This document shows positions 3,143-22,900 of a stretch of DNA of 64,000 nt, piece by piece. The position numbers and the translations under genes are program-made. Every line of letters begins with the position of its first letter. Position 1 is the stretch's first letter. This DNA is from Octopus sinensis (Eukaryota). Location: positions 100,440,001 through 100,504,000 of the forward strand of contig NC_043003.1 in NCBI RefSeq assembly GCF_006345805.1, read 5' to 3'. The notes under the pieces were generated by a model, which was given only the letters and a program-made list of their open reading frames with translations, was not told the origin of the DNA and did not search any database.

Positions 3143-3249
3143 ACTATTCTGTTGTTACTCAGAAGTAGGCACTTTAGGCGCTTCAAGAGAGGAAATCCAT
3201 CCAGTTTTCGAATTTCGTTATCAGAAAAATCTATGGTATCAAATTGATC
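3143..3249 (-). CDS. SNRPA1: U2 snRNP A' coding exon 3 (107 nt)
   Basis: ttgtag|GATCAATTT...AGAATAGT|gtaagt encodes DQFDTIDFSDNEIRKLDGFPLLKRLKCLLLSNNRIV, nearly identical to the U2A' leucine-rich repeat. Phase matches exon 2. Confidence 0.97.
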
Positions 3250-3445
3250 CTACAAGTAGTTCAAACATGTTAAAATAAAGTCAGACAAAAAAAAAGGACA
3301 AAAATAAAAAAAAAATAATACAATATTCAACTAAATTTTATTAAATTAACAGTGCTTCCCAGGTAGACAAACTGTTATTAAATTTCCAGGAAATTATTGT
3401 CCAACTAGTCACAGCAATTTTACTGTTGTATGTTATGAACCTATT

Positions 3446-3714
3446 TGTATACAGTTCTATATTTGCGAGATGAGGAATTATGTACATTATTTACATTTGA
3501 CGGATATTTGTCCTCACCTTGTTTGTTGTTAACACATTTCGGCTGATATACTCTCCAGCCTTCTTCAGGTGTCCTGGGGAAATTTCAAACCTAGGTTCTC
3601 ATTCCTAAGGTATTTTTCAATATTATTATTATTATTATTCAGGTCACTGTCTGGAATCAAACTCGGAATCTTGGGGTTAGTAGCCTGCACTCTTAACCAC
3701 CACGCCATATACCC
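3446..3714 (-). mobile_element. tRNA-headed SINE-like element carrying a hammerhead relic
   Basis: Minus strand: A-box TGGCGTGGTGG, B-box GAGTTTGATTCC, a (TAA)n spacer, then GACAC-CTGAAGA-A-GGCTG..CAGCC-GAAA-T-GTGTT and an AT-rich tail. Confidence 0.7.
3531..3573 (-). ncRNA. Degenerate minimal type-I hammerhead ribozyme motif (stem III and cleavage triplet missing)
   Basis: Stem I GACAC/GTGTT, core CTGAAGA, 5-bp stem II GGCTG/CAGCC, then GAAA. Only one nt lies between GAAA and stem I, so this copy is predicted inactive. Confidence 0.6.
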
Positions 3715-3945
3715 AACAATCTTCCTAGAACTGCCTATCTGAAATGGGAAGTGGAGTAAGTCCTCTGCACATATTTCATGAACATAGCTGTTGTAATCAA
3801 CAGCTGTGCAGTGGCTCATCCCCAGCTCTTCAACACAAAACTGGATTAAAGTCAACGCCTTGATCCATGAATAAAGGGGGGAAAAAAAGCAGTGCATTCC
3901 TAAGAGGAAGGGTGTTACATTCCAACATGTATCATTAACAGACAT
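3715..3945 (-). mobile_element. Merlin (IS1016/IS1595-like) transposase fragment truncated by the SINE
   Basis: YSWIKALTLIQFCVEELGMSHCTAVDYNSYVHEICAEDLLHFPFQIGSSRKIV matches the Merlin segment that precedes the IGG.G..VEIDES motif. Confidence 0.6.
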
Positions 3946-4861
3946 TCATTGCATCCTTTTTGGGAGCACTGCTAGTAAATTTTCCCACAAAGTATCTTGT
4001 TCATGTAGTGTCTTTTTGTACATAGTTTTCTTTTAGGGATAACACCTTTTGCATCTTTCTTGGTTTTCAGTTTCTCCATCATATTTGAAAGGTTAAATGA
4101 GTTGGCTGCAGTCAGGAAAATACATGAGGTAATGATAGGACAGACACTGAAAATTTCTGTTTGTTTTGGAAAAAGACACAGGTGAAAATGACAAAAATGA
4201 GGTAGTACAAATGTTCAATAAATAGGCATGTGTCAAAGAAAATAGACAGATAAAGACAATGCACATGGTTGGAGTACAGCAGACTATACTTTGGCTTGTT
4301 ACTCTGGAAACAGGCATCAACATGTCAGTTGCTTTCAAATGGCTAAATTTACACAAAATTTACAAACTTTAAAAGTTATCAACTCTTTATTTATTAATTT
4401 GTTGCAAAAATAAATTTTGTTTCCATAAGTAGCATACAAAACTACACCAGAACACGAAAATTGGAAACAATTGGAACAAAACTTCAAGACTTGAAAACTG
4501 TGACAGCAACAGGAAAGATCCCATTGCTTGTATGACACAGGTGCTTGTTTACAACCATCATGTGATGTCACAAGGGTATACACAAACACACATACATTTA
4601 CATATACATATGTAATCTGTAAAAATTATGAGGTATGAGAGGTAAATGTATACATACCAAATTTTCTCTTTATATATACTTATATAAAGAGAAAAAATTA
4701 GTTTATTATGATCAGTAACAATAAAGACATATTGTTTCATATCAATTAAGGTGCTAGATTGAAGTTCAGGGAATTAACCATCCTTAATGTCAACAAAAAG
4801 CAAGGGATAAAAAAAGAAGTAGTTAAAGTAAATATAAAAAAATAATTAGCTTAACCCTTTT

Positions 4862-7036
4862 CATGGTAAAGAACTTCTTCCTGATTTACAAGGAATTCTG
4901 CGAAGGTGGCGAGAACACTTTAATGAACTTTTGAATCAGCAGTCTGTAGTTAGTGAGGATGTTCTCAAACTCGTCCCTGGATTACCTGTGAAGGCGGCTC
5001 TCGCAGAACCACCAAAGTTGGAAGAAGTTGCAGTGGCTGTCTCAAGGATGAATAATGGAAAGTCTCCGGGTATGGATGGCATACAAGCGGAGTTATTACA
5101 GTATGCTGGTAAGAAACTTCTGCAGCAATTCACTCTTTGTTTGGTAGGATATGGGCTAATGAATCTGTACCTGAAGACTGGAGAGATACAGTAATGGTGG
5201 TCTTATATAAGGGAAAGTGCAACAGGAATGATTGTGGTAAGTACAGGGGAATATCATTGATTTCTGTTGTAGGAAAAGTTTTATGCAGGGTACTTCTGGA
5301 TCGTCTGCTGAAACACGCTGCAGATTTTGTGTTCTTCCAGAAAGTCAATATGGCTTTCATGTGATCTTTTCAGTTAGACAGCTTCAGGAGAAGTGTGTGG
5401 AACAGGGTCTAGATCTATATCAGGTTTTTGTCGATCTGACAAAAGCCTTTGATACTGTTAATAGAAATGCACTGTGGAAAGTCCACAAGTAACTTGGTTG
5501 TCCTGAAAAGTTCCTTGCTTTGGTTAGGTCTTTTCATGAAGATATGAAGGGTAGGGTTAATGTTAGAGGTAAAATGTCAGAGCCTATCCCAATACAAAAT
5601 GGAGTGAAACAGGGGGATACTTTGGCACTATTTGCCATATATTTTGCGATGGTCTTCTGTATTGCATTCAGAAACTGCAGATATGGTGTTTACATCCATT
5701 ATCGAACCTCTGGCAGCATATTTAATATCAGGCGCTTTGCTGCAAAAACAAAGGTATTTACCTCTATCATAAGAGACCTTTTGTATGCAGATGATTGTGA
5801 GCTAGTAGCACACACGGAGATTGATATGCAACACATTTTGAATGCATTCTCTGATGCTTGCACTGCCTTAGGATTGAAAGTCAGTCACAAGAAAACTGTT
5901 GTCATGTACCAACCTGCCCCTGGTAAGCAGTATAGTGAACCAAATATCTATATGTAAATGACATGATGTAGTTGATCAGTTTGTCTACCTGGGAAGCACT
6001 AGTAATAGATATAGCAATTTGGATGATGAAATTCCATACAGAATTAGGAAAGTAAGTGATGCCTTCCGAAGGCTGGTAAGACGCCTCTGGAGTTGGCGAG
6101 ACATATGCAGGTATTCAAAGATAAAAGTGTACAAGGCATGTGTGCTCTCTTCTCTTCTTTATGCCTGCGAAACGTGGGTCACATATCGATACCACCTTAA
6201 ACTGGAACGTTTCCATCATATGTGTCTCAGATGGATCTATGGCACTAAGTGGGAGGACCGCATCAGTGATCTTGAAATATTGGAAAGCTCTCAGTGTGTA
6301 AGTATAGAAGCTCTTGTGTTAAAGCAAAGGCTCAGATGGAGTGGTCATCTGGTCAGGATGAAGGATTCAAGGATGCCAAAACAACTCCTTTATAGAGAGT
6401 TAGCTAAAGGAGAATGACCTCCACATAAACCGAAACAGAGGTATAAAGACTTGCTGAAGGCTTCCTCAAAAGATGCTTGCATCTCTTTTGACACATGGAA
6501 GGGCATAGCTATTGACCGTAGTAGGTGGAGAAGGATTGTGTATGAGGGGACAGCTACATTTGAGAAATATCGAGCTGCACATGAGAAAGTAAGGAGGGAT
6601 GTCAAGGAGGGCATCGCTGTTGCACTTCCAGATGGTAGGGGTCTTCCTATGATGCTGACATGCAGTGTCTGTGCAAGACCCTGCCTCAGTAAAGCTGGAC
6701 TCAAGAGTCATCTTTGTAGTCATAAAGCGAAACAGATGATTGACAACCAGGTCACTGATAGTGGTGTTACACACCATACTAATCATATCTGTCATGTATG
6801 TAGAAAGGAGTGTAATTCGGCAGGTGGACTTAAACAACATGCAAAGGTACATGAAGCCCAGTTACAACTACAGCCGGCTATTGCCAGTAAAGGTTTTAGC
6901 TGCCAATTCTGTACAAGACATTGTAGATCTTTAGCTGGACTAAAGAGTCACATTCAATCACAGCACCAACAGTTAAGCCTTGTGCAATGGCCATACTCGA
7001 CAACGAGGGGTCAGCCATCATGTATTTATGTATGTA
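4862..7036 (+). mobile_element. 5'-truncated RTE (BovB-like) LINE with three C-terminal C2H2 zinc fingers; in the SNRPA1 intron
   Basis: Frameshifted RT (KSPGMDGIQAE, FVDLTKAFDTVNR, GVKQGD, YADD, LRWSGHLVRM), then CxxC-x12-HxxxH repeats at ~6655-6723, 6784-6852 and 6895-6966, and a (TGTA)n-like tail. Confidence 0.9.
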
Positions 7037-7232
7037 TAGTTAATCCAAACATGAAAACACAAAGACCAAGCACAACAATGCCAGGGCATGGAACAAGTAT
7101 AGTGTTACTGGATGCTCAGGAAAGAAAAGAAAGAGGATTTAACGTTTCGGGCAGAGCTCTTCATCAGAAACATAGAAAAAGGAAAGATCCAAGAAAGGAA
7201 GACGGAGAAAGAAAATCGCCAACGATACACAC

Positions 7233-7405
7233 GTGGTCACATAGTGGTAAGTAGCTTGCTTACCAACCACATGGTTCTATGTTCAGTCCCACTGCATGGC
7301 ACCTTGGGCAAGTGTTTTCTACTAAAGCCTCGGGCTGACCAAAGTCCTGTGAGTGGATTCAGCAGACGGAAACTGAAAGAAGCCCGTCGTATATATGTAT
7401 ATGTA

Positions 7406-7447
<42 letters not shown>

Positions 7448-7966
7448 GAGGCCCAATGGCCCAGTGGTTAGGGCAGTGGACTTGCAGTCAGAGGATCCCA
7501 GTTTCGATTCCCAGACCGGACGTTGTGTGTGTTTATTGAGCGCAAACACCAAAAGCTCCATGAGGGTCCGGCAGGAGGTGGGGGCGACCCCTATTGTACT
7601 CTTTCGCCCTAACTTTCTCTCACTCTTTCTTCCTGTTTCTTGAGTAATGCTGCGATGGACTGGCGTCCCGTCCAGCTGGGGGGGAAACACATGCCATAGA
7701 AACCGGGAAATCGGGCCCATAAGCCTGGCTAAGCTTGAAAAGGGCGCATAAATAAAATATGTGTGTGTTTGTGTATCTGTGTTTGTCCCTCCCAGCATCG
7801 CTTGACAACCGATGCTGGTGTTTACGTCCCTGTAACTTGGTAGTTCAGCAAAGAGATCGATAGAATAAGTACTAGGCTTACAAAGAATAAATCGTGGGGT
7901 CGATTTGCTCGACTAAAGGTGGTGCTCCAGCATGGCCGCAATCAAATGACTGAAACAAGTAAAAGA
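7233..7966 (+). mobile_element. tRNA-derived SINE (head, (TA)/(TG) spacer, body) split by a nested SINE
   Basis: Same head and body as the uninterrupted copy at 30108-30530 (GTGGTAAGTAGCTTGCTT..., CGCTTGACAACCGATGCTGGTG..., GACTGAAACAAGTAAAAGA). Confidence 0.85.
7445..7757 (+). mobile_element. Second tRNA-derived SINE family, nested in the (TA)n spacer of the first
   Basis: A-box TGGCCCAGTGG, B-box-like GTTTCGATTCCC, internal CTGCGATGGACTGGCGTCCCGTCCAG domain, A-rich end. Confidence 0.75.
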
Positions 7967-8183
7967 ATATATACACACACATATGTATGTATGTGTGTAT
8001 ATATATATATATATATACACACACACATATATATAACTTTTCATATCCACGCTAATTTACACCAGTAAATTCAAAGTAAAGTATGAAGAAATAACAATAG
8101 AAATGTTTTGGAAACTACTCCAATTAAAGGAAGAATTCGCATTCAACCTTTTAAAAAATATATATCAACATGTACACATTCAC

Positions 8184-8233
<50 letters not shown>

Positions 8234-8690
8234 TTATATTAAGTATGAGTTAGAAATTAGACAACCATCTAAGGGATAATAAATATCCAATATACTAATG
8301 GAGGTATACCTTTTTATATCCAAATGCTTACTGTTGCAAGGCAATAGTACGAGTGAATAACAGGTATAAGTGGAGGTAAACAAAAGTTTATCCAGAATTT
8401 ATAAGACAAGGAAGAAAATGGAGAAGAGATTCAATTGACAAACATCAGCAATCATAGGAATAAATAAATACAACTCTTACAACTGTTTCTACTTTGGGGG
8501 TCTAGTATGCGAAAGTTGACACATCATACAAAAATTGAATACCAAAACATCATAAGAGAGTCCCTAATGGCAAGAAGTAAAAACGTAAAGTCCAAGGTTA
8601 TATCCAGAAGTTGTGAGATCACGTCTTATTTCAATTTGATGGAGGAGATAATAAAGATAAAGTAAGAGAGAAGAGGGAAAGAGAGTAGGG

Positions 8691-8772
8691 GTGAAGAGAA
8701 GTAGGAGTGAAGAGAAGTAGGAGTGAAGAGAAGTAGGAGTGAAGAGAAGTAGGAGTGAAGAGAAGTAGGAGT
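8691..8772. repeat. 16-bp minisatellite GTGAAGAGAAGTAGGA x5
   Basis: Five perfect units read directly. Confidence 0.95.
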
Positions 8773-9534
8773 CGGGGCAAGGGGAGGAGGTTAGATGAAG
8801 AGGGGAGGAGAGTTGAGCCCAAATGGCGTAAAGGAGCGAAGAGAGAAGATATATATATACCCACAAGCATACACACATGTAAGTCTGCACGCACAAGTAC
8901 ACACCCATATGTATAAATATCATTATACATATGAATATATGAATAAACACTTACAAATAAGGGTTTAGTTATTTGGGAAGCAATATGCTAGAGAGGACTT
9001 GTAGAATAAATAAATTTGGCATTAAAAATAAAGTTAAGGTTAATTGTAATTATAGAGAAACAATGAGTGTTCAGGTAAGGATAGAGATGAAAGGAATGAA
9101 ATGCTATGTGTGGTAGTTTGCTATAAGAGTTATAAGAATACACCTACATATATAAATAAATATCAATAAGTATACACTCACAAATAAATCTTATTTGGGT
9201 TTTATATTTATACAGAGTTTGGGTTGAGCCTCAAGGCTTCTTCAGAGTACAAATGTTAGGAAATTAACGTGGGGAAACTCAGTTAAAATAATAGGGTAAG
9301 GTCAATAAGATAAGAGTAAAATAGGTAGAAAATAAAAAATAATGTCATGTAATGTAATAGACATGGTAAGGAAAAGTAAGAATTTCATTTCAAGATGTTA
9401 TTATAATCCATGGTATTCCATCCTGTAGCAAGTAAAGTCACTCTCTGGAGATATATCCGTAGGCTGCGGATTACATCATGTTTCCATTATACTGAGGGAA
9501 AGAGTGAAGGTAGTATGCTATGTGGTGAGTTGAA

Positions 9535-10435
9535 TGGTATGAGCGGTTTCCGTTCGGGTATCCAGTATCTGACACAGCTCAGACTGTAATAAAGTGTCTT
9601 ACAGATTTGTTCTCAGTTTTTGGTATGCCCAGTTATGTACATTCAGATCGTGGAACTGCCTTTATGTCTACAAGATTGAGAGAATGGCTCCTCGGTAAGG
9701 ACATTGCAATGAATAGGATGACACCATACAATCTCACTTGGAACAACCAAGTAGAAAGATATAATGGTATTATTTGGAAGTCAGTACTACTCTCTTTGAA
9801 AACCCGCGCCCTTCCAGTATCTTCATGTGAAACAGTTCTTCCAGATGCGTTGCATTCAATCAGATCTCTACTTTGTACGTCCACTAACACCACTTCTCAT
9901 GAACGTCTTTTTAACTATCAAAGACGTTCAGTAACAGGAACATCTATGCCAACATGGCTTCTTAACCCAGAACCTGGCTTGTTCAAAGGAACAATCACAC
10001 TAACAAGTATGACCCTATCGTGTACCAAGTTGATTTAATCGAAGCCAACTTCCAATACACTCACGTTCATTATCAAGATGGTCACGAAACCACAGTATCC
10101 ACAAAACAATTGGCATCACCAGGGAAGATTAACCCAAACATTTGTCACTCAACAGCCAGACAGAGAACCAACTGAAATTTCCCCTCCTCCAAGAGATAAC
10201 CGTCAAGAACAAAAAGAATCCCCTCAGCTGTGTCGATCACAAAGGATTTGGAAAGCTCCAGAAAGGCTTAATCTATGATTTTTTCCCTTCTTTTTCTAGG
10301 AGGGGGTGAATGTTATGCAAATAACATTGATATGAAGAGCATGCGCATTTGACAGGAAGAGGAAGAGAGAACGGTCATTCAGAATAACGTACAGGACTAT
10401 GACTAAAAATTAGTTTCTTTGAACCAGGAATTACA
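9535..10435 (+). mobile_element. Ty3/Gypsy 3' fragment: integrase, polypurine tract and short LTR (10311-10435)
   Basis: Integrase core PSYVHSDRGTAFMS...QVERYNGIIW, PPT AGGAGGGGGTGAA, then TG...CA LTR. Confidence 0.8.
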
Positions 10436-11329
10436 TGTTTATTGGTAATTTAACTTATTTTGCAACAATTGTGCATATTTATTCATCAGCTATGTTTTTG
10501 TAGATAAGAATTATGAACAACTTTTCCTGTGATTGTGATTTGAGAAGATATACAGAAGTATGCTAAAGATCGGCATAATCTCTTATGGGCAAGAAATGTA
10601 AAATACAGTTTATTATAAACACAAACACTTCATAATTTAATAGCCTTCAATGTGATGCCTGTTAAACAGAAATTATTTTTATTTAATCAAAATTTAATAA
10701 AATCTAATCATAAGTAAGTGAAATTATGCTAAATACAACTAAATAAAAAAAACTTTTTTCCCCAGGCCCTATCGGCAATTCTGAAAACTTTTGGGTGCGA
10801 ATTTGACACGAGTAAAAGCTTTTTTTAATCATTTTTATCCTGAAAATTACCTGTGTAAATTACACAGGTGTGCAAATTATATGAATGGTTCTGTCTATGC
10901 CACTTCCATTAATACAAACTGAATTATCTGGGAATGCTGAAAAAGACCAGCATCCTTTCCATGTAACAATGTATCATCCATTTAATAACATGGAAATAGA
11001 GCTAAGTATCAGTCCTTAAAATATCTCCATCAATCTTGTTTATGAAGAGATTTCTAAGTTAAACCCACTGAAGAGAGAGACTGTGGAAGATATAGGCTGA
11101 AGTAATAAAGAGTGAGCTGAAGATGTTGCACATCACAGAAGATATGACAAAGGACTGTCCTGATGAGTGATATGCAGTACAGGAAAAGACCTGACCACTC
11201 ATAGTGAAACATGCATTGAAATGATGGTAGTGACAAAAGCTGGTGATATATACAGATGTGCATCCATTCATGTGCACACATACCCCTACACATATGCATA
11301 TATATATAAATATATACACATGCACATCT

Positions 11330-12790
11330 TCATTTAATGTCTGTCTTCCCCAGGCTACTGTGTCTGTTTTGAGAGGGATTTTACAGCCCTTCCTAACACC
11401 AACAACTCTGCAAAGTGGACTCAGTGCCTTTTACATGGCACTAGCACAGGTGAGGTTAGTTTTGGCATGATTTTTACAGCTGGATGCCCTTCCAAATATC
11501 AGCCATTTTACAGTGTGGACTGGATGCTTTTTACGAGGCATCAGCACTGGCAAGGTCACCAAGTAACTTGCAAGGAATTTTGGGAGGGAACTTGTGTCAG
11601 AGGATGAAAAGTTAGAGTGTAACAGAGAGACAGAAACGGGTGTCTTGCTATAATGGAGGGGGTATTGGAAACAGTGATCTAATGTCAAATGATGAAAGGT
11701 TAGAGCAAGATAGAGAAATAGAGATGCAGAAACAGGTATCTTGCTATAGAGGAGGTACATGGTTACCCAACAAGTGAGAGAGAGAAAGAGAGAGAAGAGA
11801 AAGGTACAAGAAAGAGGATAGAAACAGGTACACAGATATAAAGAAGATATTTGGTTATGTAGTCAGAAAGAAATGCAAGAGGAACCAGAGTGATCAAGAA
11901 TGAGGGCAAAAACAGGTGTGCTACTGTAGAGGAGATATACGGCTACCCAACCAGAGGAAAGAGTAAGGGAAAGAGAGAAAGAGTGGGAAACAGCAAAAGT
12001 GCAAGAGAGAGCAGGAAGGAGATGATGAAGTGCCAAGGATCCAGGAAGGAGATGAAGTAAAAAGGATCAGAGCATAGATGTGATGGTAGAATAAGGAAGA
12101 GAGAGGTATAGAGGTCATAATATACATGGTCAGGTATTGTGAAGAAGGTATAAGTAGGGAGTAGAGATTGTTGTGACTTGCAAAAACTTGGGTATAAAAA
12201 TGGGGTGGGGGAAAGCAGCAATACAGTGAGCAAGAAGGGCAGAGAAGGGGATTGGAAGACAATCATAGTTTATGGAGAGGAAATGTAAGAGAAAGATGCA
12301 GTTTAGATAAGATGTAGTTTGGGTCCTTGGGGTAAGGTGTGTGAAAAGTTTGTTGTTACATGTGGGTGGGACACAACGCTTCTAGCTCTCAGTTTTGCTG
12401 ATGTGGGTGGGTCTTCTCTAGAACATACTATCACCAAACATCTCAGTCTATTGTCATTTCCTTTGTGAGCCTAACAGCCTAAGATCAGTCCTCACCACTT
12501 CATCTCATTTCTTCCTGGGTCTCTCTCTTCCACAGGTGCTATTAACTTTCAATGACAGGCACTTCTTTATACAGCTGTCTTTACTCATATGCATCACATG
12601 TCCAAACCAACACATTCTCCTCTCCTGCATGCCACATTTAATCCCTTTCATGTCTAACTTTTCTTTTAACACAGTTATGCTTTGTCAGTCATGCACACTG
12701 ATGTTGCAAATTCAACAGGGCATACTACCTTCATTCCTCTCCAGAGAGGCATAAGAGGAATTGGTTATTGTGTGCAAGCAAGAAGACTGC
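11330..12790 (-). mobile_element. RTE LINE 3' fragments (RT C-terminus and 3' UTR)
   Basis: 12480-12620 resembles 20590-20720; it carries the family 3' motif TACAGCTGGATGCCCTTCC also seen near 20075. Confidence 0.55.
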
Positions 12791-12977
12791 GCTGGTTTGA
12801 TATACATGTATATATCATTTTATTTCAAAGTCTACTTTTTCATGCTTGCATGAATCAGGCAAGAGTATGTTGGGGCAGAGATTTCTATGGCTGGATGCCA
12901 GTTCAACAGCTAATATTTAAAAACTTAAATCAAAAAGAAAATCAAGTTCGTATGTAGTTAGAAAATTAGATATTCAC

Positions 12978-13018
12978 CAAAGTAGTGCCCAAATTTTCAA
13001 TAACAGGAATTTTATAGC
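12978..13018 (-). CDS. SNRPA1: U2 snRNP A' coding exon 2 (41 nt)
   Basis: tatttcag|GCTATAAAATTCC...ACTACTTTG|gtgaat encodes (G)YKIPVIENLGTTL. Confidence 0.97.
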
Positions 13019-13327
13019 CTGAAATACAATAAGACAATTTTATTAGGAGAGTTAAATTTATAACATTTACTCAAATGACACTCATGTTTATTCAATGTAA
13101 AGCAGTAAAAATGTAGTTCATTGTTAATAACTGTATAAAATTAGAGAAAATACGGGAGTTGTTTGTGCTATTTGAAATAGCGACAAAATTTTAGAATATG
13201 TTGTCAGTCAAATTAACTGAAAATACAGGCCTGACCACTGAAATGTTGCGACATTTGGGCTAGGAACCAGTTGTGTGTCTGAAACGGTTTATTTACCATT
13301 GTCTGTTGTTAATATTTAAAAGTCATA

Positions 13328-13858: not shown

Positions 13859-13940
13859 CTCGCAGATCTAATTCACGGTCTCTAACCGGGTTGGTATATT
13901 GAGCTGAATGTTCTATTAATTCAGCAGATAGTTTAACCAT
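13859..13940 (-). CDS. SNRPA1: U2 snRNP A' coding exon 1 (82 nt)
   Basis: acaacaATG...CTGCGAG|gtaatc encodes MVKLSAELIEHSAQYTNPVRDRELDLR(G), the conserved U2A' N-terminus. Confidence 0.97.
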
Positions 13941-14282
13941 TGTTGTTTGTTTAAGCCAATAAATTATTATTTTAACCACTCTAAATATAATAATAATAAT
14001 ACACAGTCAGGTTGGTGAAGAGTATCTAACAACACACTCGTAAGTTTCAATTCGCGATCAAAGAGAGATGAAACACATGGAAGATTAATGGCGAATGGCG
14101 CATGCGCGAAATAAGGGAGATAATTCTGGTGAATTGTTGTTGGGGGCGCTGCTGAGTTTTTAGCGTCTTCCTCTCGTCTTCACCTTTATAAGCAGACGAC
14201 AGGCATTCAGTTGTTATCGCACTTCAATGGAATGTTAAATACTTTCATATAAAAAGAAACCAGTTCAAGCATTGCGTACACG
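13941..14282. promoter_or_regulatory. Shared bidirectional promoter and 5' UTR region of SNRPA1 and SYCP1
   Basis: 342 bp between divergent ATGs; locally CpG-rich; palindromic GCGCATGCGC (NRF1/Ewg-type) at 14098-14107; two ATGGCG (YY1-like) cores at 14088 and 14095. Confidence 0.7.
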
Positions 14283-16949
14283 ATGCAAAGTACTTTAGCA
14301 TCGATGTCTCAAGTCTATGAGAAGACTGATCAAAATTTGGCGAACAGTTCTGAGTCTACAAACTATGGTCTCGGTTTAACAAAAAAACTTAAAATGCCTC
14401 TTATTATGCATAAAAGTACAACTCTGCTTCAAACGCTCCAAGAAAATCTTGTCTCTAAAGAAAAACCAAAACATGAGAAACAATCATTAAATACCCAAGA
14501 TGTAGAATGCAAACTATTTTCCTTGCATAGTCGACTCCGACAGGAAGCTGAAAAAATAAGGGAGTGGAAACTTTCCACAGAAGCTGAAAGCAAACAAAAA
14601 GAGAAAAAAATAGGGGAATTGACCCAAACTATTGAGAATCTTAGAAAATCTTTCATAGAATTGCAAATAGAAAATGAAAACTTAAGTCAAAAGATGCAAG
14701 AAGAAATTAGCAACAGAGAAGAAATTTTGAAAAAAATTGATTTTACTCGAAAAATGTGTAACATTGTCAAAGAACATTCTCAAACTGTAGAGAATAAAAT
14801 GATGCAATGTGAAGCAGAAAGCAATGAATTAAAATATAAAGAAAGAGAACATTTTGAAAAATTTGAAGAACTTTCAGTAAAATTCAATGATTTAAATATT
14901 TCAGCCAAAGACGAAGAAAATAAATTAAAAAATGAAATTAATAATATTGTTCAGGAGAAGGAAAAGCAGAGAAAAGTTTTAGAAAAGAGGATAGCAGATA
15001 TGCAGAATATCAATAAGGAGTTACAGAATGAAATTAGTTGTAGAAATGAAAAGTTGGAACAATTAAATAAAGATTTACATGATGCTAAAGAGGAGAAAGA
15101 TCAACTAAAGTTTGATTATGAAGAATCTAAGAAATGTCTTTCAGAAGTGGAATTTAAATACACAACCCTTAAATTTGAAACAACTGAGAAAAGTAATGAA
15201 GCTTTATTAATAATGGCTTCTTCAGAAAATCTTTTAAAAGAAGCAAATGAAGCTTACGAAAAACTAGAAAAAGAATGTGGAGAATTAAATGTTAAATATA
15301 CATCAGCAAATAAAATGATTGAAGACTTGAAGAGTGATAAAGATATCTTAGTTTTAGAGAATGCAGAGTTGAGTGAAAATCTAAAACAAGAAATAAGCTA
15401 TAAAGACAATCTACTGGCCCAGTTAAATTCCAAATCTGCCAAGATAAATAACCTCAATAGCAACATTATACTGTTAAATGATGAAATAGTCAATGCAAAG
15501 GCTTTGAATGTGGATGCTGCTGATATGCATGAAAAAACAAAAGAAAAACTTAAAACTTTAGAAGAAAAATACAAAACCCTAAGCAATGAGTCAGAAGTAC
15601 TAAAAGGCAAATTTCAAGAAAAAGTGGAACAATTAAATGAGGCCTTGAAAAACATTGAAGAACTTAAAAAAACATCTTCAGTTGAATCTAATGAACTGAC
15701 AAATATTATATCAGAGCTAAGAAATGAAAATAATCTGCTGGAAGATGAAATATCTAATCTAAAAACACAAATGAAAAATCATGAAAGTAAATATTCTTCT
15801 CACATTGGCAAATTAAATAAAACAATTGAAGAAAATGCAATTTCATTTAGTAAATATGCAGATATAGTGAAGGCAAAAGAAACAGAAATTGAAGAATATA
15901 AAGATAAACTTCAAACGATACAAAAAGAAATTGATGAATGTCAACAAGAAAAAGTAGTCTTAATGGGTTATCAAGAAGAACTTAAACAAATGACAATTTT
16001 GAAAGAAAATGCAGTTCAAGATAAGGAGAGAATTTTAAAAGTAAGTGAAAATCAAAAAGAAGAAATGGTGAATACTCTTGAAAAGTATAAAAAAGAAAAT
16101 CAGAAAATATTTGACATTAAGACTAAAGAAATCTACGCAAAGAATGAAAGTGAAATCAAAGAACAAAAATTGAAACATGAAAATGATTTGAAAGAAAAAA
16201 CAAGTGAATTTGAGAAAGAGATCTTACAGTATAAAAGTGAAATTTCTGAGCTAAGACAGAATGTTCAATATCAAATGGAGAACAATATCCAACTTGAAGA
16301 AAAAATAGATATAATGCTAAAGGAGAAAGAAAATATGAAAAAGGAAATGTATGAAAATACCATGCAAACAGTGTTTCCAACAAGAAAACAACCTCAAGTG
16401 GCAGTCCTGATGACACCACAACATCCAATTAATATGACACCTTCAAGAATAAATGTAAATTCCTTTAAATCAAACTTCTTAACTTCCAAGAAGAGAAAAG
16501 TGGTGTTTAATTCTGATGATATGATGCTTGTGTCTGATTCAGACTCCTCAGTATCTGAATGCCAAAGGAACGATAAAATCACAATAAGGACCCCATTATT
16601 GAAACAACACCAGAAGAACATAAATTCACCCAAGAAAGATAATGTTTCTGATCATAAGTTAGAAGAGGTGGTCCTTACTACTGGGAATCAACAAAATCTT
16701 GAAAATAACATTTCAGCAAGAAGTAGGAAAACCAGAACTTTGACTGGAAATAATAAGACAAAAAAAAGTCCAGTGAAACAAAATTTAAATACTGTTAAAC
16801 CAAAGAGAGCAAATGTGAAAAAATCTGAAACTCAACCTGTAAAGAAGTTTTTCAAATCCCCAAAGTCTAAGAGATCACTAGCATCTTCAATTGACAAATA
16901 TGCTTGGTTTGATATGGATTCTGTGTTTGGGTTTGGATCTGATGATTAA
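14283..16949 (+). CDS. SYCP1: Synaptonemal complex protein 1, single-exon 888-aa ORF
   Basis: aa ~78-166 (LFSLHSRLRQEAEKIREWKLSTEAESKQKE...TRKMCNIVKEH) align without gaps to the conserved SYCP1 N-terminal motif as recalled (LSRVYSKLYKEAEKIKKWKVSTEAELRQKE...TRHLCNLLKET). A long coiled coil and a basic, S/T-P-rich tail follow. No stops or frameshifts. Confidence 0.92.
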   Translation: MQSTLASMSQVYEKTDQNLANSSESTNYGLGLTKKLKMPLIMHKSTTLLQTLQENLVSKEKPKHEKQSLNTQDVECKLFSLHSRLRQEAEKIREWKLSTEAESKQKEKKIGELTQTIENLRKSFIELQIENENLSQKMQEEISNREEILKKIDFTRKMCNIVKEHSQTVENKMMQCEAESNELKYKEREHFEKFEELSVKFNDLNISAKDEENKLKNEINNIVQEKEKQRKVLEKRIADMQNINKELQNEISCRNEKLEQLNKDLHDAKEEKDQLKFDYEESKKCLSEVEFKYTTLKFETTEKSNEALLIMASSENLLKEANEAYEKLEKECGELNVKYTSANKMIEDLKSDKDILVLENAELSENLKQEISYKDNLLAQLNSKSAKINNLNSNIILLNDEIVNAKALNVDAADMHEKTKEKLKTLEEKYKTLSNESEVLKGKFQEKVEQLNEALKNIEELKKTSSVESNELTNIISELRNENNLLEDEISNLKTQMKNHESKYSSHIGKLNKTIEENAISFSKYADIVKAKETEIEEYKDKLQTIQKEIDECQQEKVVLMGYQEELKQMTILKENAVQDKERILKVSENQKEEMVNTLEKYKKENQKIFDIKTKEIYAKNESEIKEQKLKHENDLKEKTSEFEKEILQYKSEISELRQNVQYQMENNIQLEEKIDIMLKEKENMKKEMYENTMQTVFPTRKQPQVAVLMTPQHPINMTPSRINVNSFKSNFLTSKKRKVVFNSDDMMLVSDSDSSVSECQRNDKITIRTPLLKQHQKNINSPKKDNVSDHKLEEVVLTTGNQQNLENNISARSRKTRTLTGNNKTKKSPVKQNLNTVKPKRANVKKSETQPVKKFFKSPKSKRSLASSIDKYAWFDMDSVFGFGSDD

Positions 16950-17009
16950 GGACACAAGTTAACAATCAGATTATTAAGAGAACAAAAAGAAAAACAGAAC
17001 CAAATTAAA

Positions 17010-17015
17010 AATAAA
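17010..17015 (+). terminator. Candidate SYCP1 polyadenylation signal AATAAA
   Basis: 60 nt after the stop codon and followed by T-rich sequence; common hexamer in AT-rich DNA. Confidence 0.4.
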
Positions 17016-19079: not shown

Positions 19080-19950
19080 CTCCTTCAATAAATGCACCCT
19101 CTGAAATTTGAACCAATTCCCTGAACTTGTTGTCTCAGCCATCAAGTACAAAATTGATGTTATCTGTGTGCAAGAACACAGGTTTTATCATGATGATGTT
19201 GAGCTGAAATTGCACAATACTGATAGAAGCTGGACTTACTTCTCAGCCTTAGCTTGGAAAGATTCAACCAATTCCACCATTGGCAGTGTGGGTATGCTAC
19301 TAAACCTACCAGCCCTCATCTTTAAACAGCATAATGAAAATTCATGCATAAATAGTAATAGCCGCTTACCAAGGAAATACAGAAACATCACTCATATCTT
19401 GCTTATTCACTAGCAAACACAACAGATAAGAAACTTCCAATTTTATCAGGCTCTCTTTCCTCATTAGAGCAACTAATATCAAAGCACTGTTCTCATAATT
19501 AGAGGTGATGTGGATGCTCATCTCAAAAGATCTGAAGTCATAAATACACATTCCACACAACCATGAATATAATCACTATCTAACTGAATTTATTCTTGAA
19601 AATCAATTAGTATATGTAAATGCCGAATACCAAAAGAAACTCTCCAAGCTATATACATTCAAATATACCAATGGCATGAATACCCAACTTGATAACATGC
19701 TAATCAACAAGAAATGGGTGAATAGTGCCTTAAACACAGTCTTACAATACTTTTGAGGGAGTTAGCAATGACCACAAAATTGCCACATAGAGCTAATAAA
19801 ACTAAATTACCCTCTAGACCTGCATATGATGGGTTAGTTTTTATCAGTAACAGAGGAACCTGTGATCAATACACCATTGCAGTTAGAAACAGATTTGAGC
19901 TAAAGCAAAATGAAAATGGACAAAACTCCTCCAATACAGCCTTACAATAT
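19080..19950 (+). mobile_element. RTE-X-like LINE, AP-endonuclease region; interrupted by the RTE at 19952-23450
   Basis: IDVICVQEHRFYH...AWKDSTNSTIGSVGMLL, followed by GDVDAH and a QLDNMLINKKW-like segment. Confidence 0.7.
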
Positions 19951-19951
19951 C

Positions 19952-22900
19952 ATCAGCATCATCATCATCATTGTTTAACGTTCGCTTTCCATGCTAGCAT
20001 GGGTTGGACAATTTGACTGAGGACTGGCGAACCAGATAGCTGCACCAGGCTCCAATCTGACCTGGCAGAGTTTCTACAGCTGGATGCCCTTCCTAATGCC
20101 AGCTACTCCAAGAATGTAGTGGGTGCTTTTATGTGCCACTGGCATGAGGGCCAGTGAGGCAGTACTGGCAACAACCACGCTCAAATGGTGTTTTTTACTT
20201 GCCACCTGCAGAGGAGCCAGTCCAGTGGCACTGGCAATGACCTCACTCAAATGTTTTTTAACGTGCCACCGGCACAAGTGCCAATGAGGCGATGCTGGTA
20301 ACAATCATGCCCAAATGGTGCTTTTTACGTGCCACCGGCATGGAAGCCAGTTAGCTGCTATGGCAACAATCATGCTCAGATGGTGCTCTTAGCACTCCAC
20401 TAGCACAGATTCCAGTCCTTAAATTTGATTTGATTTCATTTGCCTCAACAGGTCTTCACAAGCAGAGTTTAGTGTCCAATGAAGGAAAGGTACACATAAG
20501 TGGGCTGGTTGCTGGGTCTTCTCAAGCACAGCATATTTTCAAAGGTCCCAGTCACTAGGCATTGCCTCGGTGAGGCCTAATGTTCAAAGGTCGTACTTCA
20601 CCACTTCATCCCAGGTCTTCCTGGGTCTACCTCTTCCACAAGTTCCCTCAACCGCTAGGGTGTGGCACTTTTTCACACAGCTATCCTCATCCATTCTCAT
20701 CACATGACCATACCAGCACAGTTGTCTATCTTGCACACCACATCTGATGCTTCTTAGGTCCAACTTTTCTCTCAAAGTACTTACACTCTGCCGAGTATGC
20801 ACACTGACATTACACATCCATCGGATCATACTGACTTCATTCCTTGCGAGCTTACGCATGTCCTCAGCATGGCCCATGTTTCACTGTCATGTAGCATGGC
20901 TGTTCGTACACGTGTCATGCATTCTACCTTTTACTCTGAGCGAGAGGCCCTTTGTCACCAGCAGAGGTAAGAGCTCTCTGAACTTTGCCAAGGCTATTCT
21001 TATTCTAGCAGCTACACTTTCAGTGCACCCACCCCTGCTACTGACTTGGTCACCTAGGTAATGAAAGCTGTCTAGTTTTTCTCCCTGGAATGTGGCGGAA
21101 GTTGTTCTCTGCACATTTTCAGTGTTTATTGCTCCTGAGCGCCACATACAAAAACTATCTTCCCAGATAGCCTTCCTTTGATATTGCTGCACCTCTTATG
21201 TGTCCATAGCTTACATCTTATAGAGTTTCTACCTACGCCTTTTCTACAGATTGAGCAGAACCATCTACCTGAAGGGATTTGTGGTTTGCCTGCCTTCCTA
21301 CTTATTAGGACTTTGGCTTTAACTAGGTTGGCTCTAAGACCCTTCGATTCTAATCCTTGTTTTCACACCTGAAGCTTTTCCTCTAGTTCTGATAGTGACT
21401 CAGCAATTAGAGCAAGGTCGTCAGCATAGAGGAGCTCCCAGGGGCATCCTGTCTTGAATTCCTCTGTTATTGCCTGGAGGTCTATGATAAATAGGAGGGG
21501 GCTGAGGACTGAACCTTGGTGAACCCCTACCTCTACCCAGAATTCTTCACTGTATTCGTTGCTAACTCTCACCTTACTGACAGCGTCCCTATACATGGCT
21601 TGCACAGCTCTCACTAACCATTCATCTATCCCAAGTTTCGTCATTGTCCACCAGATAAGGGATTGGGGGACCCTGTCAAAGGCTTTCTCCATGTCAACAA
21701 AAGCCAAGTACAAAGGTTTATCTTTGGCAAGGTATTTCTCCTGCAGCTCTCTTACCAGATATATAACATCAGTGGTGCTTTTCCCTGGCACGAACCCAAA
21801 CTGCATCTTATCTAAACTGACTCTCTCCCTAATTAGTTGGGCTATGACCCTCTCAGTGACCTTCATTACCTGATCCAACAACTTGATACCTCTAATTATT
21901 TGTATCTAAAGTGTCACCTTTACCTTTGTAGCAGTTGACTATAGTGCTGCTACACCAGTCGTTGGGTATGACTCCTTTGTGTATAACCTGGTTAACTATA
22001 CAGGTGACTAGGCTATAGCTGACACTGCCAGATATTTTGAGCATCTCTGTCTTCATATTCTTAATTGCTTTATCTACCAATGTACTGTCAACTCAGATAG
22101 CTGGTCCCTCTGTTGGGTCGACATTAGGCAAACTCTCTTTCTCCCATTCATTTTCTTTATTTAGCAACCTTTCATAGTGGTGTCTCGAACTCTCTTTCTT
22201 TGCAGCCTCATTTAGTGCAAGTGAACCATCATCCATGCAGACACATTTCTCTTTTACAACATCTCGATTCTCTCTCACACACTGTCTTGCAACACAAAAC
22301 ACCTCAAGTCTTTGGTTTTCACGGTGCACAACATTGGTAAATTTTTCCTTATCTGACTAAATAAACCTGTCTCCTAGCTTTCTTTCTGGCAGTCTGATAC
22401 AATTCCCTGCTACCACCATTCTTCCAGTCCTTCCAAGCCTGTTTCTTTTCTCTAATAGCCCTGTTGACAACATTGTTACACCACCACGTTATTTTGGGTC
22501 TTGAGGGGACTTTGTACCATCCACAGCTCTGGTCAGTGGCCCTCAGCAGTTTGTCTTCTATATCGTGTGAAGCTATATCCCCTTCTATTCCGTCAAAGGC
22601 TTTGAGTAATATGTCTCTAAATCTCTATCCATTTGCAGGATCTTCCAGACCCTTCTCCTCTATGCTGGTCGTCTTCTGGGTATCCACTTAGCCCTGATTC
22701 TGAAATCACTAACTACCAGTCTATGTTGTGGGGTACATTCTTCACCTGGGAAGGTTTTGGCATTTATAAGCAGCTGTCTTTCCCTTTTTCTGGCGAGGAT
22801 GTAGTCAATTTAGCTTGTGTGTTTGCCAGATCGGTAGGTGACTAGGTGACTGGCAGGTTTCCTGAAGTTAGTATTGCAAACCATAAGATCATTTGCATCA

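What the first reader, a model, noticed from the sequence alone, without database searches (positions are those of the whole stretch)
13859..16949. Intronless SYCP1: a probable meiotic retrogene that captured the SNRPA1 housekeeping promoter
Seen: a 2667-bp uninterrupted SYCP1 ORF starts 342 bp from the SNRPA1 ATG in divergent orientation. The neighbouring SNRPA1 is spliced with a ~10-kb intron, and the ORF is intact among decayed TEs. Established: vertebrate SYCP1 has about 30 exons; retrocopies lack introns, often become functional by landing at existing bidirectional promoters, and are enriched for germline expression. Inference: this is a retroposed copy of a core synaptonemal-complex gene, possibly a replacement of the parental gene. 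The A-rich stretch at ~16981-17015 could be a decayed poly(A). It raises the question of how meiotic specificity is obtained from a promoter shared with a ubiquitous spliceosomal gene.
Basis: partly seen in the sequence, partly recalled or inferred. Interest (0 to 1): 0.8.

Follow-up and report, generated by a model that had tools for sequence, protein, structure and literature searches.

The report
Cephalopod SYCP1 is an old retrogene
Octopus carries its core chromosome-pairing gene SYCP1 as a single intron-free exon set head-to-head against the housekeeping splicing gene SNRPA1, whereas abalone and scallop keep a 25-33 kb many-exon SYCP1 elsewhere; it is therefore an old, functional retrocopy, repeating what is already known for amphioxus.

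Summary
An 888-codon ORF (14283-16949, +) encodes a bona fide SYCP1, and it starts 342 bp from the ATG of SNRPA1 exon 1 (13940-13859, -). The window is Octopus sinensis chromosome CM016865.1, and the gene is already annotated as SYCP1 in three Octopus genomes, each time as one coding exon.

The retrogene reading is supported. Abalone SYCP1 has at least 25 coding-exon blocks over 33 kb and scallop at least 18 over 24 kb, and neither lies near SNRPA1. Published counts give 21 introns in Aplysia and Lottia.

The event is old, not recent. A second lineage (ENA contig L001, 35% protein identity, probably a squid, cuttlefish or bobtail relative) has the same uninterrupted ORF, the same head-to-head SNRPA1 (about 386 bp) and a shared promoter motif block. 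dN/dS within Octopus is about 0.24 with no indels. No second cephalopod-type SYCP1 turned up in the protein collections, so replacement of the parent is likely but not proven.

Two details fail. The A-rich stretch holds ATTAAA and AATAAA and is better read as the gene's own polyadenylation region. The GTAAGT at 14040 lies upstream of the inferred transcript start.

This is a new instance of a published kind, the amphioxus SYCP1 retrogene replacement with a co-opted bidirectional promoter.

The parts
14283..16949 (+). SYCP1 coding sequence, a single uninterrupted exon (888 codons plus TAA)
   Evidence: ORF. Pfam SCP-1 61.5 bits. Modelled as one 2667-bp exon in O. sinensis, O. bimaculoides and O. 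vulgaris. dN/dS 0.24-0.26 with no indels.
14517..14819 (+). CM1 / alphaN-end region (residues 79-179), the family's diagnostic conserved motif
   Evidence: Aligns to human SYCP1 6f62 residues 6-106 at E = 1.3e-15. In a holothurian-like genome (L009/L010) this same region is split into several exons.
14505..16334 (+). Central alpha-helical rod (residues 75-684), in two long helices: 75-347 and 366-684
   Evidence: AlphaFold2 secondary structure, pLDDT 70-88 over most of the rod. No proline between residues 63 and 698.
16428..16946 (+). Disordered basic C-terminal tail (residues 716-888; net charge +17; six S/TPxx motifs), ending in WFDMDSVFGFGSDD
   Evidence: Composition. Predicted disorder. 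The terminal motif is shared with abalone, mussel, scallop, amphioxus, acorn worm and crinoid SYCP1.
13941..14282 (.). 342-bp spacer between the divergent SNRPA1 and SYCP1 start codons; the putative bidirectional promoter plus both 5' UTRs
   Evidence: Direct reading. 100% identical in O. vulgaris and 92.4% in O. bimaculoides. The equivalent spacer in L001 is about 386 bp.
14068..14131 (.). Conserved promoter block. Contains ATGGCG x2 (14088, 14095), GCGCATGCGC (14098-14107), GCGCGAAA (14104-14111) and AAGGGAGATAATTCTGGTG. On the SNRPA1 sense strand it reads TTTCGCGCA-TG-CGCCAT-T-CGCCAT.
   Evidence: Alignment with L001. CGCATGCGC is unique in 64 kb, with 0.03 expected by chance. The composite TTTCGCGCA...CGCCAT is unique in the window. 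It also occurs once in L008, upstream of an SNRPA1 that has no SYCP1 neighbour.
14190..14201 (+). AAGCAGACGACA, a 12-mer in the inferred SYCP1 5' UTR that is identical in every cephalopod locus
   Evidence: Exact match in L001, L002, L003, L005, L006 and L007. The 5' ends of the mRNA-like contigs L002-L004 map about 35-45 nt upstream of it, corresponding to about window 14150-14160.
17004..17015 (+). ATTAAA followed by AATAAA inside the A-rich stretch, 55-66 nt after the stop codon; the probable polyadenylation signals
   Evidence: The first 150 nt after the stop are 96.6% identical between O. sinensis and O. bimaculoides, against 92.7-93.5% further out.
13859..13940 (-). SNRPA1 (U2 snRNP A') coding exon 1, followed by a GT donor at 13858-13857
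   Evidence: NCBI gene models with Pfam LRR_9 end here in O. sinensis and O. vulgaris.
12978..13019 (-). SNRPA1 mini-exon 2 (YKIPVIENLGTTL); boundaries approximate
   Evidence: L001 has the same layout.
3145..3249 (-). SNRPA1 exon 3 (DQFDTIDFSDNEIRKLDGFPLLKRLKCLLLSNNRI). The intron between exons 2 and 3 is about 9.7 kb and full of transposon relics.

Best explanation
This is the functional SYCP1 gene of Octopus, the transverse-filament protein of the synaptonemal complex. It originated as a retrocopy. A spliced SYCP1 mRNA from a germ cell was reverse-transcribed and inserted a few hundred bases upstream of SNRPA1, in the opposite orientation. The copy thereby lost all of the roughly 20-30 parental introns and gained a ready-made, germline-active promoter.

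The insertion happened before Octopus diverged from a distant second cephalopod lineage, probably the squid, cuttlefish and bobtail side. The copy has been kept under purifying selection since then, and it most likely replaced the multi-exon parent.

Shown here: the intron-free ORF, its family identity, the conserved head-to-head arrangement, the multi-exon and unlinked state in abalone and scallop, and selective constraint.

Inferred: the retroposition mechanism itself, loss of the parent, use of the shared promoter, and meiotic expression.
For: 1. Family identity. Pfam SCP-1 and human SYCP1 crystal fragments match. The architecture is as expected: a disordered N-terminus, a helical rod of about 600 residues and a basic S/TPxx tail.

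2. Intron-free in four genomes. O. sinensis, O. bimaculoides and O. vulgaris each have 2667 bp modelled as one exon. L001 has an uninterrupted ORF at 35% identity.

3. The ancestral state is multi-exon.
- Haliotis: 1088 aa over 33,090 bp, at least 25 blocks.
- Ylistrum: 1126 aa over 24,475 bp, at least 18 blocks.
- A holothurian-like genome has CM1 split into several exons.
- Published counts are 21 introns in Aplysia and Lottia, 25 in Capitella and 23 in sea urchin and sponge (PMC5803294 Table S1).

4. New location. There is no SNRPA1 within 10 kb of abalone or scallop SYCP1; their neighbours are OSTMP1 and a MutS_I-domain gene. There is no SYCP1 within 9.6 kb upstream of SNRPA1 in another invertebrate, L008.

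5. Age. SNRPA1 exon 1 lies head-to-head in L001, with the same SNRPA1 exon layout and a shared motif block plus a shared 12-mer in the spacer. Octopus, L001 and the Logan sequence form one clade among lophotrochozoans.

6. Constraint. dN/dS is 0.24-0.26 with no indels, while the flanks carry gaps.

7. Transcription. Contigs L002-L004 come from three runs and have ragged ends within 50 nt of each other at both ends. An AATAAA lies about 20 nt before the 3' end, and they run collinear with L001 genomic DNA through the 5' UTR. Cephalopod transcriptome accessions are listed in PMC5803294 Table S3.

8. Sole copy. No second cephalopod-type SYCP1 appeared among 55 word-search hits or 150 exhaustive-search representatives.

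9. Precedent. [quoted passage not shown]
Against: - No classical retroposition scars were found. There are no target-site duplications, and the A-rich tract is better explained as poly(A) signals. This is expected for an old event, but it leaves the mechanism inferred rather than seen.
- The species behind L001 and L002-L004 could not be identified, so the dating rests on sequence distance and tree position.
- Only 10-kb flanks of two non-cephalopod molluscs were examined, and Nautilus was not examined.
- No whole-genome search for a parental copy was possible.
- The statistical support for spacer conservation is modest: local alignment score 33, against a shuffle maximum of 32 and non-coding controls of 28-31.
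- The GCGCATGCGC palindrome is broken in O. bimaculoides.
- No expression data for octopus tissues were available.
Confidence: 0.8

Rival explanations
1. Intron loss in place. The ancestral multi-exon SYCP1 was converted to an intron-free gene at its original locus, by recombination with a reverse-transcribed full-length cDNA. The adjacency to SNRPA1 arose separately, either by rearrangement or because it was ancestral near the cephalopod stem.
For: No poly(A) relic or target-site duplications can be shown. Only two non-cephalopod mollusc loci with 10-kb flanks were inspected. Mollusc genomes are rearranged relative to cephalopods (background knowledge).
Against: All of the at least 25 coding introns are gone at once, with no 3' bias, while the adjacent SNRPA1 keeps its introns in both lineages. 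Abalone and scallop SYCP1 have different neighbours and no SNRPA1. The ORF sits exactly at a promoter in divergent orientation, the pattern typical of surviving retrocopies and seen in amphioxus (PMC5803294).
Confidence: 0.08
2. A retrogene that is an extra copy rather than a replacement. A multi-exon parental SYCP1 still exists in cephalopod genomes, unannotated or very divergent, and does the canonical meiotic job. The SNRPA1-linked copy has a subsidiary or new role.
For: No whole-genome nucleotide search was possible. Protein collections depend on annotation, and multi-exon genes in unannotated assemblies would be missed.
Against: Three independently annotated Octopus genomes each give only this SYCP1, and no other cephalopod-like representative was found. 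The intron-free copy retains every family feature, including CM1, the rod, the basic tail and the terminal FGFG motif. It has stayed intact across a deep split. PMC5803294 recovered one cephalopod clade from octopus, blue-ringed octopus and cuttlefish transcripts.
Confidence: 0.1
3. A non-functional processed pseudogene, or a chance ORF, that happens to lie near SNRPA1.
For: The locus is surrounded by decayed transposons.
Against: It is an 888-codon ORF in roughly 30% G+C DNA. It is intact in four genomes spanning 35-100% identity. dN/dS is about 0.24 with no indels. mRNA-like contigs exist.
Confidence: 0.01

Closest known systems
Amphioxus SYCP1 retrogene replacement with co-opted bidirectional CHIC promoter (Garstang & Ferrier 2018, PMC5803294)
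   Same: It is the same gene family. Both have a single coding exon, against more than 20 introns in relatives. Both inserted head-to-head with an unrelated, broadly expressed gene. Both are conserved across species of the clade, and in both no parental copy is detected.
   Different: - The phylum differs, so this is an independent event.
- The partner gene is SNRPA1, not CHIC.
- The spacer is 342-386 bp, against about 3.3 kb in amphioxus.
- There is no sign here of the multi-exon de novo 5' UTR seen in amphioxus: the mRNA-like contigs are collinear with genomic DNA.
- The amphioxus case has cloned transcripts and in situ expression data.
Ciona intestinalis SYCP1 (0 introns; Table S1 of PMC5803294)
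   Same: SYCP1 is intron-free in a lineage whose relatives have many introns. The authors also note that cephalopod and tunicate CM1 sequences group together as long branches.
   Different: Tunicate genomes are compact and have lost introns widely. Cephalopod genomes are large and intron-rich, and the neighbouring SNRPA1 has a 9.7-kb intron, so a gene-specific event is needed here.
Multi-exon mollusc SYCP1 (Haliotis XP_071115241.1, Ylistrum XP_060067799.1, Mytilus VDH92807.1)
   Same: These are orthologous proteins. They share CM1, the rod and the basic tail, and have an identical terminal motif WFDxDSVFGFGxED.
   Different: They have at least 25 and at least 18 coding-exon blocks spread over 33 and 24 kb. 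Their neighbours differ and they are not linked to SNRPA1. They share only 27-37% identity with the octopus protein.
Mammalian testis-expressed retrogenes (e.g. Pgk2, Pdha2; background knowledge, PMC12377818 for Pdha2)
   Same: They are germline-expressed, intron-free copies of multi-exon parents that became functional.
   Different: Those coexist with an X-linked parent and compensate for its silencing. Here the copy appears to be the only SYCP1.

Membership tests
SYCP1 (synaptonemal complex transverse-filament protein, Pfam PF05483) | Conserved CM1 / alphaN-end motif near the start of the rod | tested here: met
   Pfam 61.5 bits against a cut-off of 23. 6f62 matches at E = 1.3e-15 over residues 79-179. 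48 invariant columns with squid-like, urchin and mouse proteins, concentrated in this region.
SYCP1 (synaptonemal complex transverse-filament protein, Pfam PF05483) | Long central alpha-helical (coiled-coil) rod of about 600-700 residues | tested here: met
   AlphaFold2 helices at 75-347 and 366-684. No proline at residues 63-698. Oligomeric state was not modelled.
SYCP1 (synaptonemal complex transverse-filament protein, Pfam PF05483) | Unstructured basic C-terminal tail with S/TPxx DNA-binding-type motifs | tested here: met
   Residues 716-888 have net charge +17, six S/TPxx motifs and pLDDT below 50.
SYCP1 (synaptonemal complex transverse-filament protein, Pfam PF05483) | Orthology: groups with SYCP1 of related phyla rather than with other coiled-coil proteins | tested here: met
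   All named hits are SYCP1. An NJ tree places it among lophotrochozoan SYCP1s (no bootstrap was run).
SYCP1 (synaptonemal complex transverse-filament protein, Pfam PF05483) | Meiotic prophase expression and localisation between synapsed axes | not testable with these tools
   No octopus expression or cytology data were available.
Retrogene (functional processed retrocopy) | Lacks the introns of the parental gene throughout the coding region | tested here: met
   0 coding introns, against at least 25 (Haliotis) and at least 18 (Ylistrum) exon blocks, and 21 introns in Aplysia and Lottia.
Retrogene (functional processed retrocopy) | Sits at a locus unrelated to the parental one | tested here: met
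   In cephalopods it is SNRPA1-adjacent. In abalone and scallop there is no SNRPA1 within 10 kb and the neighbours differ. The test is limited to 10-kb flanks and two outgroup species.
Retrogene (functional processed retrocopy) | Poly(A) tract at the 3' end | tested here: inconclusive
   A 74%-A stretch lies 32-66 nt after the stop, but it contains ATTAAA and AATAAA, and it has no counterpart at the same place in L001 or L002.
Retrogene (functional processed retrocopy) | Flanking target-site duplications | tested here: not met
   Only chance-level 74-79% repeats flank the ORF. This is expected to be erased at this age, so it lowers direct proof but not plausibility.
Retrogene (functional processed retrocopy) | Functional: intact ORF under purifying selection, and transcribed | tested here: met
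   dN/dS 0.24-0.26 with no indels. The ORF is intact at 35% identity. mRNA-like contigs come from three runs. Transcription in Octopus itself was not tested here.
Retrogene replacement (parent lost) | No parental multi-exon copy remains in the genome | tested here: inconclusive
   There is none in the protein collections, but no whole-genome nucleotide search was possible.
Bidirectional promoter pair | Divergent genes with start sites less than 1 kb apart | tested here: met
   342 bp between ATGs in O. sinensis and O. vulgaris, 345 bp in O. bimaculoides, and about 386 bp in L001.
Bidirectional promoter pair | Shared, conserved regulatory block between the two genes | tested here: inconclusive
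   The motif block and the 12-mer are conserved in order and position, but the alignment score only just exceeds the shuffles. Naming the motifs E2F-, NRF1- or YY1-like is a resemblance recalled from memory.
Bidirectional promoter pair | Mapped divergent transcription start sites and co-regulation | not testable with these tools
   This needs CAGE or RNA-seq.

The most novel reading that the evidence does not exclude
SYCP1 has been replaced by a retrocopy independently in at least three animal lineages: amphioxus, tunicates and coleoid cephalopods. An unidentified lophotrochozoan (L013) may be a fourth. In both amphioxus and cephalopods the surviving copy docked onto the bidirectional promoter of a broadly expressed gene.

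That would make SYCP1 a recurrent and predictable target of retrogene replacement. It would also mean that a core meiotic gene can run from a housekeeping-type promoter of the TTTCGCGCA/CGCCAT kind, either because germline specificity comes from somatic repression at such elements, or because strict meiotic specificity is not required.
Probability: 0.45. Interest if true: 0.6.

Novelty: new member of a known kind. Interest (0 to 1): 0.45.

Why it matters
This is a second well-supported case, in another phylum, of an essential meiotic structural gene being wholly replaced by its own retrocopy and then surviving for a very long time on a borrowed bidirectional promoter. Such convergence suggests a rule rather than an accident: genes highly expressed in germ cells are copied often, and copies landing at germline-active divergent promoters can take over.

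It also provides a compact system for asking how a meiosis gene is regulated beside a ubiquitous spliceosomal gene. The spacer is only 342 bp and holds a handful of conserved motifs.

For annotation and phylogenetics, it helps explain the long cephalopod SYCP1 branch noted in earlier work.

Tried and rejected
1. A CM1-profile word search meant to reach mollusc SYCP1 loci returned only a sea-cucumber protein and a short fragment.

2. A word search with the 76-aa SNRPA1 N-terminus returned only short fragments and no named mollusc locus. Mollusc loci were reached later through the exhaustive HMMER job, the name look-up and the contig look-up.

3. A literature search for the run and assembly accessions (SRR82816.., ERZ21867824) found nothing relevant, so the species of L001 and L002-L004 remain unidentified.

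4. The bacterial-type promoter and terminator scan of the spacer is irrelevant for a eukaryote and was disregarded.

5. A repeat search for target-site duplications around the ORF found only chance-level matches.

6. Decayed poly(A) tail: rejected as the simplest reading, because the tract carries two canonical poly(A) signals and the insertion is far too old for a neutral tract to persist.

7. GTAAGT at 14040 as a 5'-UTR intron donor: rejected as unsupported. It lies upstream of the conserved block and of the inferred transcript start. It is absent from L001, and the mRNA-like contigs are collinear with genomic DNA.

8. 'NRF1 palindrome' as the key conserved element: downgraded, because it is broken in O. 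bimaculoides (GCGCAGGCGC). What persists is TTTCGCGCA plus CGCCAT.

9. P0249/L014 and P0202/L015 as possible Nautilus-like, SNRPA1-linked copies: rejected. Both come from compact, intron-poor genomes with other neighbours.


Full report
**1. The observation**

The window holds an ATG-to-TAA ORF at 14283-16949 on the + strand: 888 codons, 2667 bp with the stop. It is by far the longest ORF in the 64 kb. The next is 376 aa, and the other long ORFs are reverse-transcriptase, integrase and mariner-transposase relics.

On the minus strand, 13940->13859 reads MVKLSAELIEHSAQYTNPVRDRELDLR+G and is followed by a GT donor. This peptide matches residues 1-28 of human U2 snRNP A' (SNRPA1) in 1a9n and many spliceosome structures (E = 2e-9). 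Exactly 342 bases separate the two start codons.

**2. What the ORF encodes**

Pfam SCP-1 (PF05483) scores 61.5 bits against a gathering cut-off of 23. Residues 79-179 align to the human SYCP1 alphaN-end crystal fragments 6f62 and 6f5x at E = 1e-15 and 4e-11. All named hits in the protein searches are SYCP1.

The architecture is that of the family:
- Residues 1-74 are predicted disordered.
- Two long helices span 75-347 and 366-684.
- The rest is disordered (AlphaFold2, mean pLDDT 61.9 and 70-88 along the rod).
- There is no proline between residues 63 and 698.
- The tail 716-888 carries net charge +17 and six S/TPxx motifs.

**3. Where the window comes from**

The protein is encoded on Octopus sinensis GCA_006345805.1, chromosome CM016865.1. 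Its 90% cluster also contains O. bimaculoides XP_014790593.1, named 'synaptonemal complex protein 1', and an O. vulgaris protein.

In all three genomes the public gene model is a single 2667-bp coding exon with SNRPA1 head-to-head 343-346 bp away. The gene is therefore already annotated. What is not described in the searchable literature is its intron-free, SNRPA1-linked state.

**4. Constraint**

Nei-Gojobori estimates give dN/dS = 0.24 for O. sinensis against O. bimaculoides (dS 0.066, dN 0.016) and 0.26 for O. vulgaris against O. bimaculoides. There is no indel in 2667 bp, while the flanks carry many gaps. The ORF is a functional gene.

**5. A second, distant lineage has the same arrangement**

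Two relatives were found: P0003 on a 148-kb ENA genomic contig (L001), and P0002 on roughly 3-kb Logan contigs from three runs (L002-L004). They are 68% identical to each other and 35-37% identical to octopus over 96-98% of its length.

In L001 the whole protein is one uninterrupted ORF. The automatic gene call over-extends it upstream, and the real ATG is at about 10274. SNRPA1 exon 1 lies on the opposite strand at 9887-9804, which gives a spacer of about 386 bp. L001 also shares the octopus SNRPA1 layout, with a separate 13-codon exon 2.

A quick NJ tree of the CM1 region puts octopus with (L001 + Logan), inside the lophotrochozoan SYCP1s (no bootstrap was run). I could not identify the species. 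From the distance and tree position I infer a cephalopod far from Octopus, most simply a decapodiform. This is an inference.

**6. The ancestral state is multi-exon and elsewhere**

The exhaustive HMMER search found 354 family representatives. Name look-ups identified abalone, mussel, scallop, sea-slug, pond-snail, whelk, annelid, echinoderm, hemichordate and amphioxus SYCP1s.

| Species | Protein | Genomic span | Coding-exon blocks found | Neighbour |
|---|---|---|---|---|
| Haliotis cracherodii | 1088 aa | 33,090 bp | at least 25 | OSTMP1-domain gene downstream |
| Ylistrum balloti | 1126 aa | 24,475 bp | at least 18 | MutS_I-domain gene head-to-head, 1,068 bp away |

The block counts are lower bounds, because short exons escape tblastn. 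Neither locus has any SNRPA1 signal within 10 kb on either side.

Holothurian-like genomic contigs (L009, L010) show the CM1 region itself split into several exons. Garstang & Ferrier (PMC5803294, Table S1) list 21 introns for Aplysia and Lottia, 25 for Capitella, 23 for sea urchin and a sponge, and 0 for Ciona and amphioxus. Octopus is not in that table; it appears only in their phylogeny.

Conversely, an unidentified invertebrate contig with a compact SNRPA1 (L008) has no SYCP1 signal in the 9.6 kb upstream of it.

The cephalopod state therefore combines two derived features: loss of all coding introns, and a new genomic address. That is the signature of retroposition.

**7. The spacer**

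Octopus and L001 share a block at window 14068-14131: ATGGAAG..AATGGCG..CGCATGCGC.AAAT..AAGGG.AGATAAT.C.GGTG. They also share an exact 12-mer, AAGCAGACGACA (14190-14201), which is present in every cephalopod locus fetched. CGCATGCGC occurs nowhere else in the 64 kb (0.03 expected).

Read on the SNRPA1 sense strand, the block compares as follows:
- Octopus sinensis: TTTCGCGCA-TG-CGCCAT-T-CGCCAT, at -171 to -148 from the SNRPA1 ATG.
- O. bimaculoides: TTTCGCGCAGGCGCAATTCGCCAT, so the palindrome is not strictly kept.
- L001: TTTTGCGCATGCG...CCGCCAT.
- L008, where SYCP1 is not a neighbour: TTTCGCGCA...CGCCAT at -208 to -185.

The composite pattern is unique in the window and unique in L008. This suggests the block is an SNRPA1 promoter element that the retrocopy came to share.

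The caveats are real. The best local alignment of the two spacers scores 33, against a shuffle maximum of 32 and 28-31 for non-coding controls. L008 is a single unidentified species. Calling the motifs E2F-, NRF1- or YY1-like is a resemblance from memory, not a test.

**8. Transcript ends**

L002-L004 come from three runs and end within about 50 nt of each other at both ends. They carry AATAAA about 20 nt before the longest 3' end, and they lack SNRPA1 exon 1. I read them as mRNA. If they are DNA instead, they are simply a further intron-free genomic copy.

Their 5' ends align just downstream of the conserved block, equivalent to about window 14150-14160, and they run collinear with L001 genomic DNA to the ATG. 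That lineage therefore has no 5'-UTR intron.

The GTAAGT at 14040 lies upstream of the block. It is conserved within Octopus but absent from L001. Nothing supports it as a splice donor.

The A-rich stretch 16981-17015 is real (74% A) but contains ATTAAA (17004) and AATAAA (17010). The first 150 nt after the stop are better conserved between Octopus species than the sequence further out (96.6% against about 93%). It is most simply the gene's polyadenylation region. No target-site duplications were found.

**9. Is it the only copy?**

Neither the word-based search (55 hits) nor the exhaustive search gave a second cephalopod-type SYCP1. When its 150 best representatives were compared with a reference panel, the only two whose best match is a cephalopod were 25-27% identical. 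One of them, P0249, sits on a contig from a compact, intron-poor genome; the other, P0288, was not examined further.

This argues for replacement of the parent. It depends on annotation, however, and is not a whole-genome search.

**10. Mechanism and rivals**

Best explanation (0.8): an old retrogene. It very probably replaced its parent, it is driven from the promoter region it shares with SNRPA1, and it is retained as the cephalopod transverse-filament gene.

Rivals:
- CDNA-mediated intron loss in place plus rearrangement (0.08).
- A retrogene coexisting with an undetected parent (0.1).
- A pseudogene (0.01).

**11. Comparison with what is known**

The closest precedent is this same gene in amphioxus: a single coding exon, the parent lost, and a bidirectional promoter shared with CHIC (PMC5803294).

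The octopus case differs in several ways:
- The phylum is different, so the event is independent.
- The partner gene is SNRPA1.
- The spacer is about ten times shorter.
- There is no evidence of a de novo multi-exon 5' UTR.

It is a new member of a known kind. Interest is moderate. The convergence, in both retrogene replacement and promoter sharing, is the notable point, and the small spacer makes the regulatory question experimentally tractable.

Noticed in passing
L013:6849-10298 (ENA ERZ25070167, 12.4-kb contig): Another uninterrupted SYCP1 ORF (1149 aa, 3450 bp) on a genomic contig from an unidentified organism. Its protein is closest to scallop, mussel and abalone SYCP1 (28-30% identity). 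It is not next to SNRPA1 and has no poly(A) run downstream. A polypyrimidine-AG acceptor-like site lies just upstream of the ORF. This may be a further independent single-coding-exon SYCP1 in a lophotrochozoan.
   Followed up: partly
window 16905-16946 (residues 875-888); panel: The extreme C-terminus, WFDMDSVFGFGSDD, is a motif (W-F/V-D-x-D-S/A-V/I-F/Y-G-F-...) shared by abalone, mussel, scallop, L013, amphioxus, acorn worm and crinoid SYCP1. It is absent from mouse, alligator, sea urchin and the Ridgeia model. I did not check whether it has been described before.
   Followed up: partly
L001:12917-12961: The L001 SYCP1 ends ...FWFDTDFPKI*, so it lacks the terminal S-I/V-FGFGxDD that octopus and the 68%-identical Logan sequence both have. 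No FGFG-coding sequence was found in the next 10 kb. This is either a real truncation or an assembly error.
   Followed up: partly
L014:10001-12745 and L015:10001-12682 (ENA ERZ25072740, ERZ25067903): Two more full-length SYCP1-family ORFs (914 and 893 aa) lie on large contigs from compact, intron-poor eukaryotic genomes. Their neighbours, such as ribosomal protein S6e, UNC-50 and a 1018-aa C2-domain protein, are also single ORFs. Neither is SNRPA1-linked. The organisms are unidentified.
   Followed up: partly
window 3250-12977 (SNRPA1 intron 2) and 17000-64000: The 9.7-kb SNRPA1 intron and the 47 kb downstream of SYCP1 are filled with transposon relics:
- RVT_1 fragments at 5520-5954, 21366-21881 and 42272-42940.
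- An integrase/RNase H-like ORF at 33249-34376.
- A mariner Transposase_1 ORF at 55990-56562.
- A 267-aa ORF with C2H2 / SUZ12-like zinc-finger matches at 6451-7251.
No other long-ORF host gene was seen.
   Followed up: partly
window 12978-13019 and 3145-3249; L008:10076-10222: In octopus and L001 the 13-codon SNRPA1 exon 2 is separate from exon 3, by 9.7 kb in octopus and 1.7 kb in L001. In the unidentified invertebrate L008, and in many short database fragments, the two are one exon. This is a cephalopod-side intron gain or a loss elsewhere.
   Followed up: no
L006:1-2655 (O. bimaculoides CM046607.1): The O. bimaculoides annotation gives the gene upstream of SYCP1 an 836-residue product with no Pfam hit on record. 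The O. sinensis and O. vulgaris annotations give a 157-residue LRR_9 (SNRPA1) product at the same place. The O. bimaculoides model is probably fused or mis-modelled.
   Followed up: no
window 14283-16949 vs L007:3001-5667: O. sinensis and O. vulgaris SYCP1 differ at only 4 of 2667 positions (dS 0.002), and the 342-bp spacer is identical. O. bimaculoides differs at 2.4% of coding positions.
   Followed up: yes
L001:4755-4895 and 19854-19961 vs window 52212-52350 and 52574-52681: L001 and the octopus window share about 72%-identical stretches of a repeat. Mariner-type ORFs (Transposase_1, HTH_48) are called a few kb away in each source. This is consistent with related transposon families in the two genomes.
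   Followed up: no
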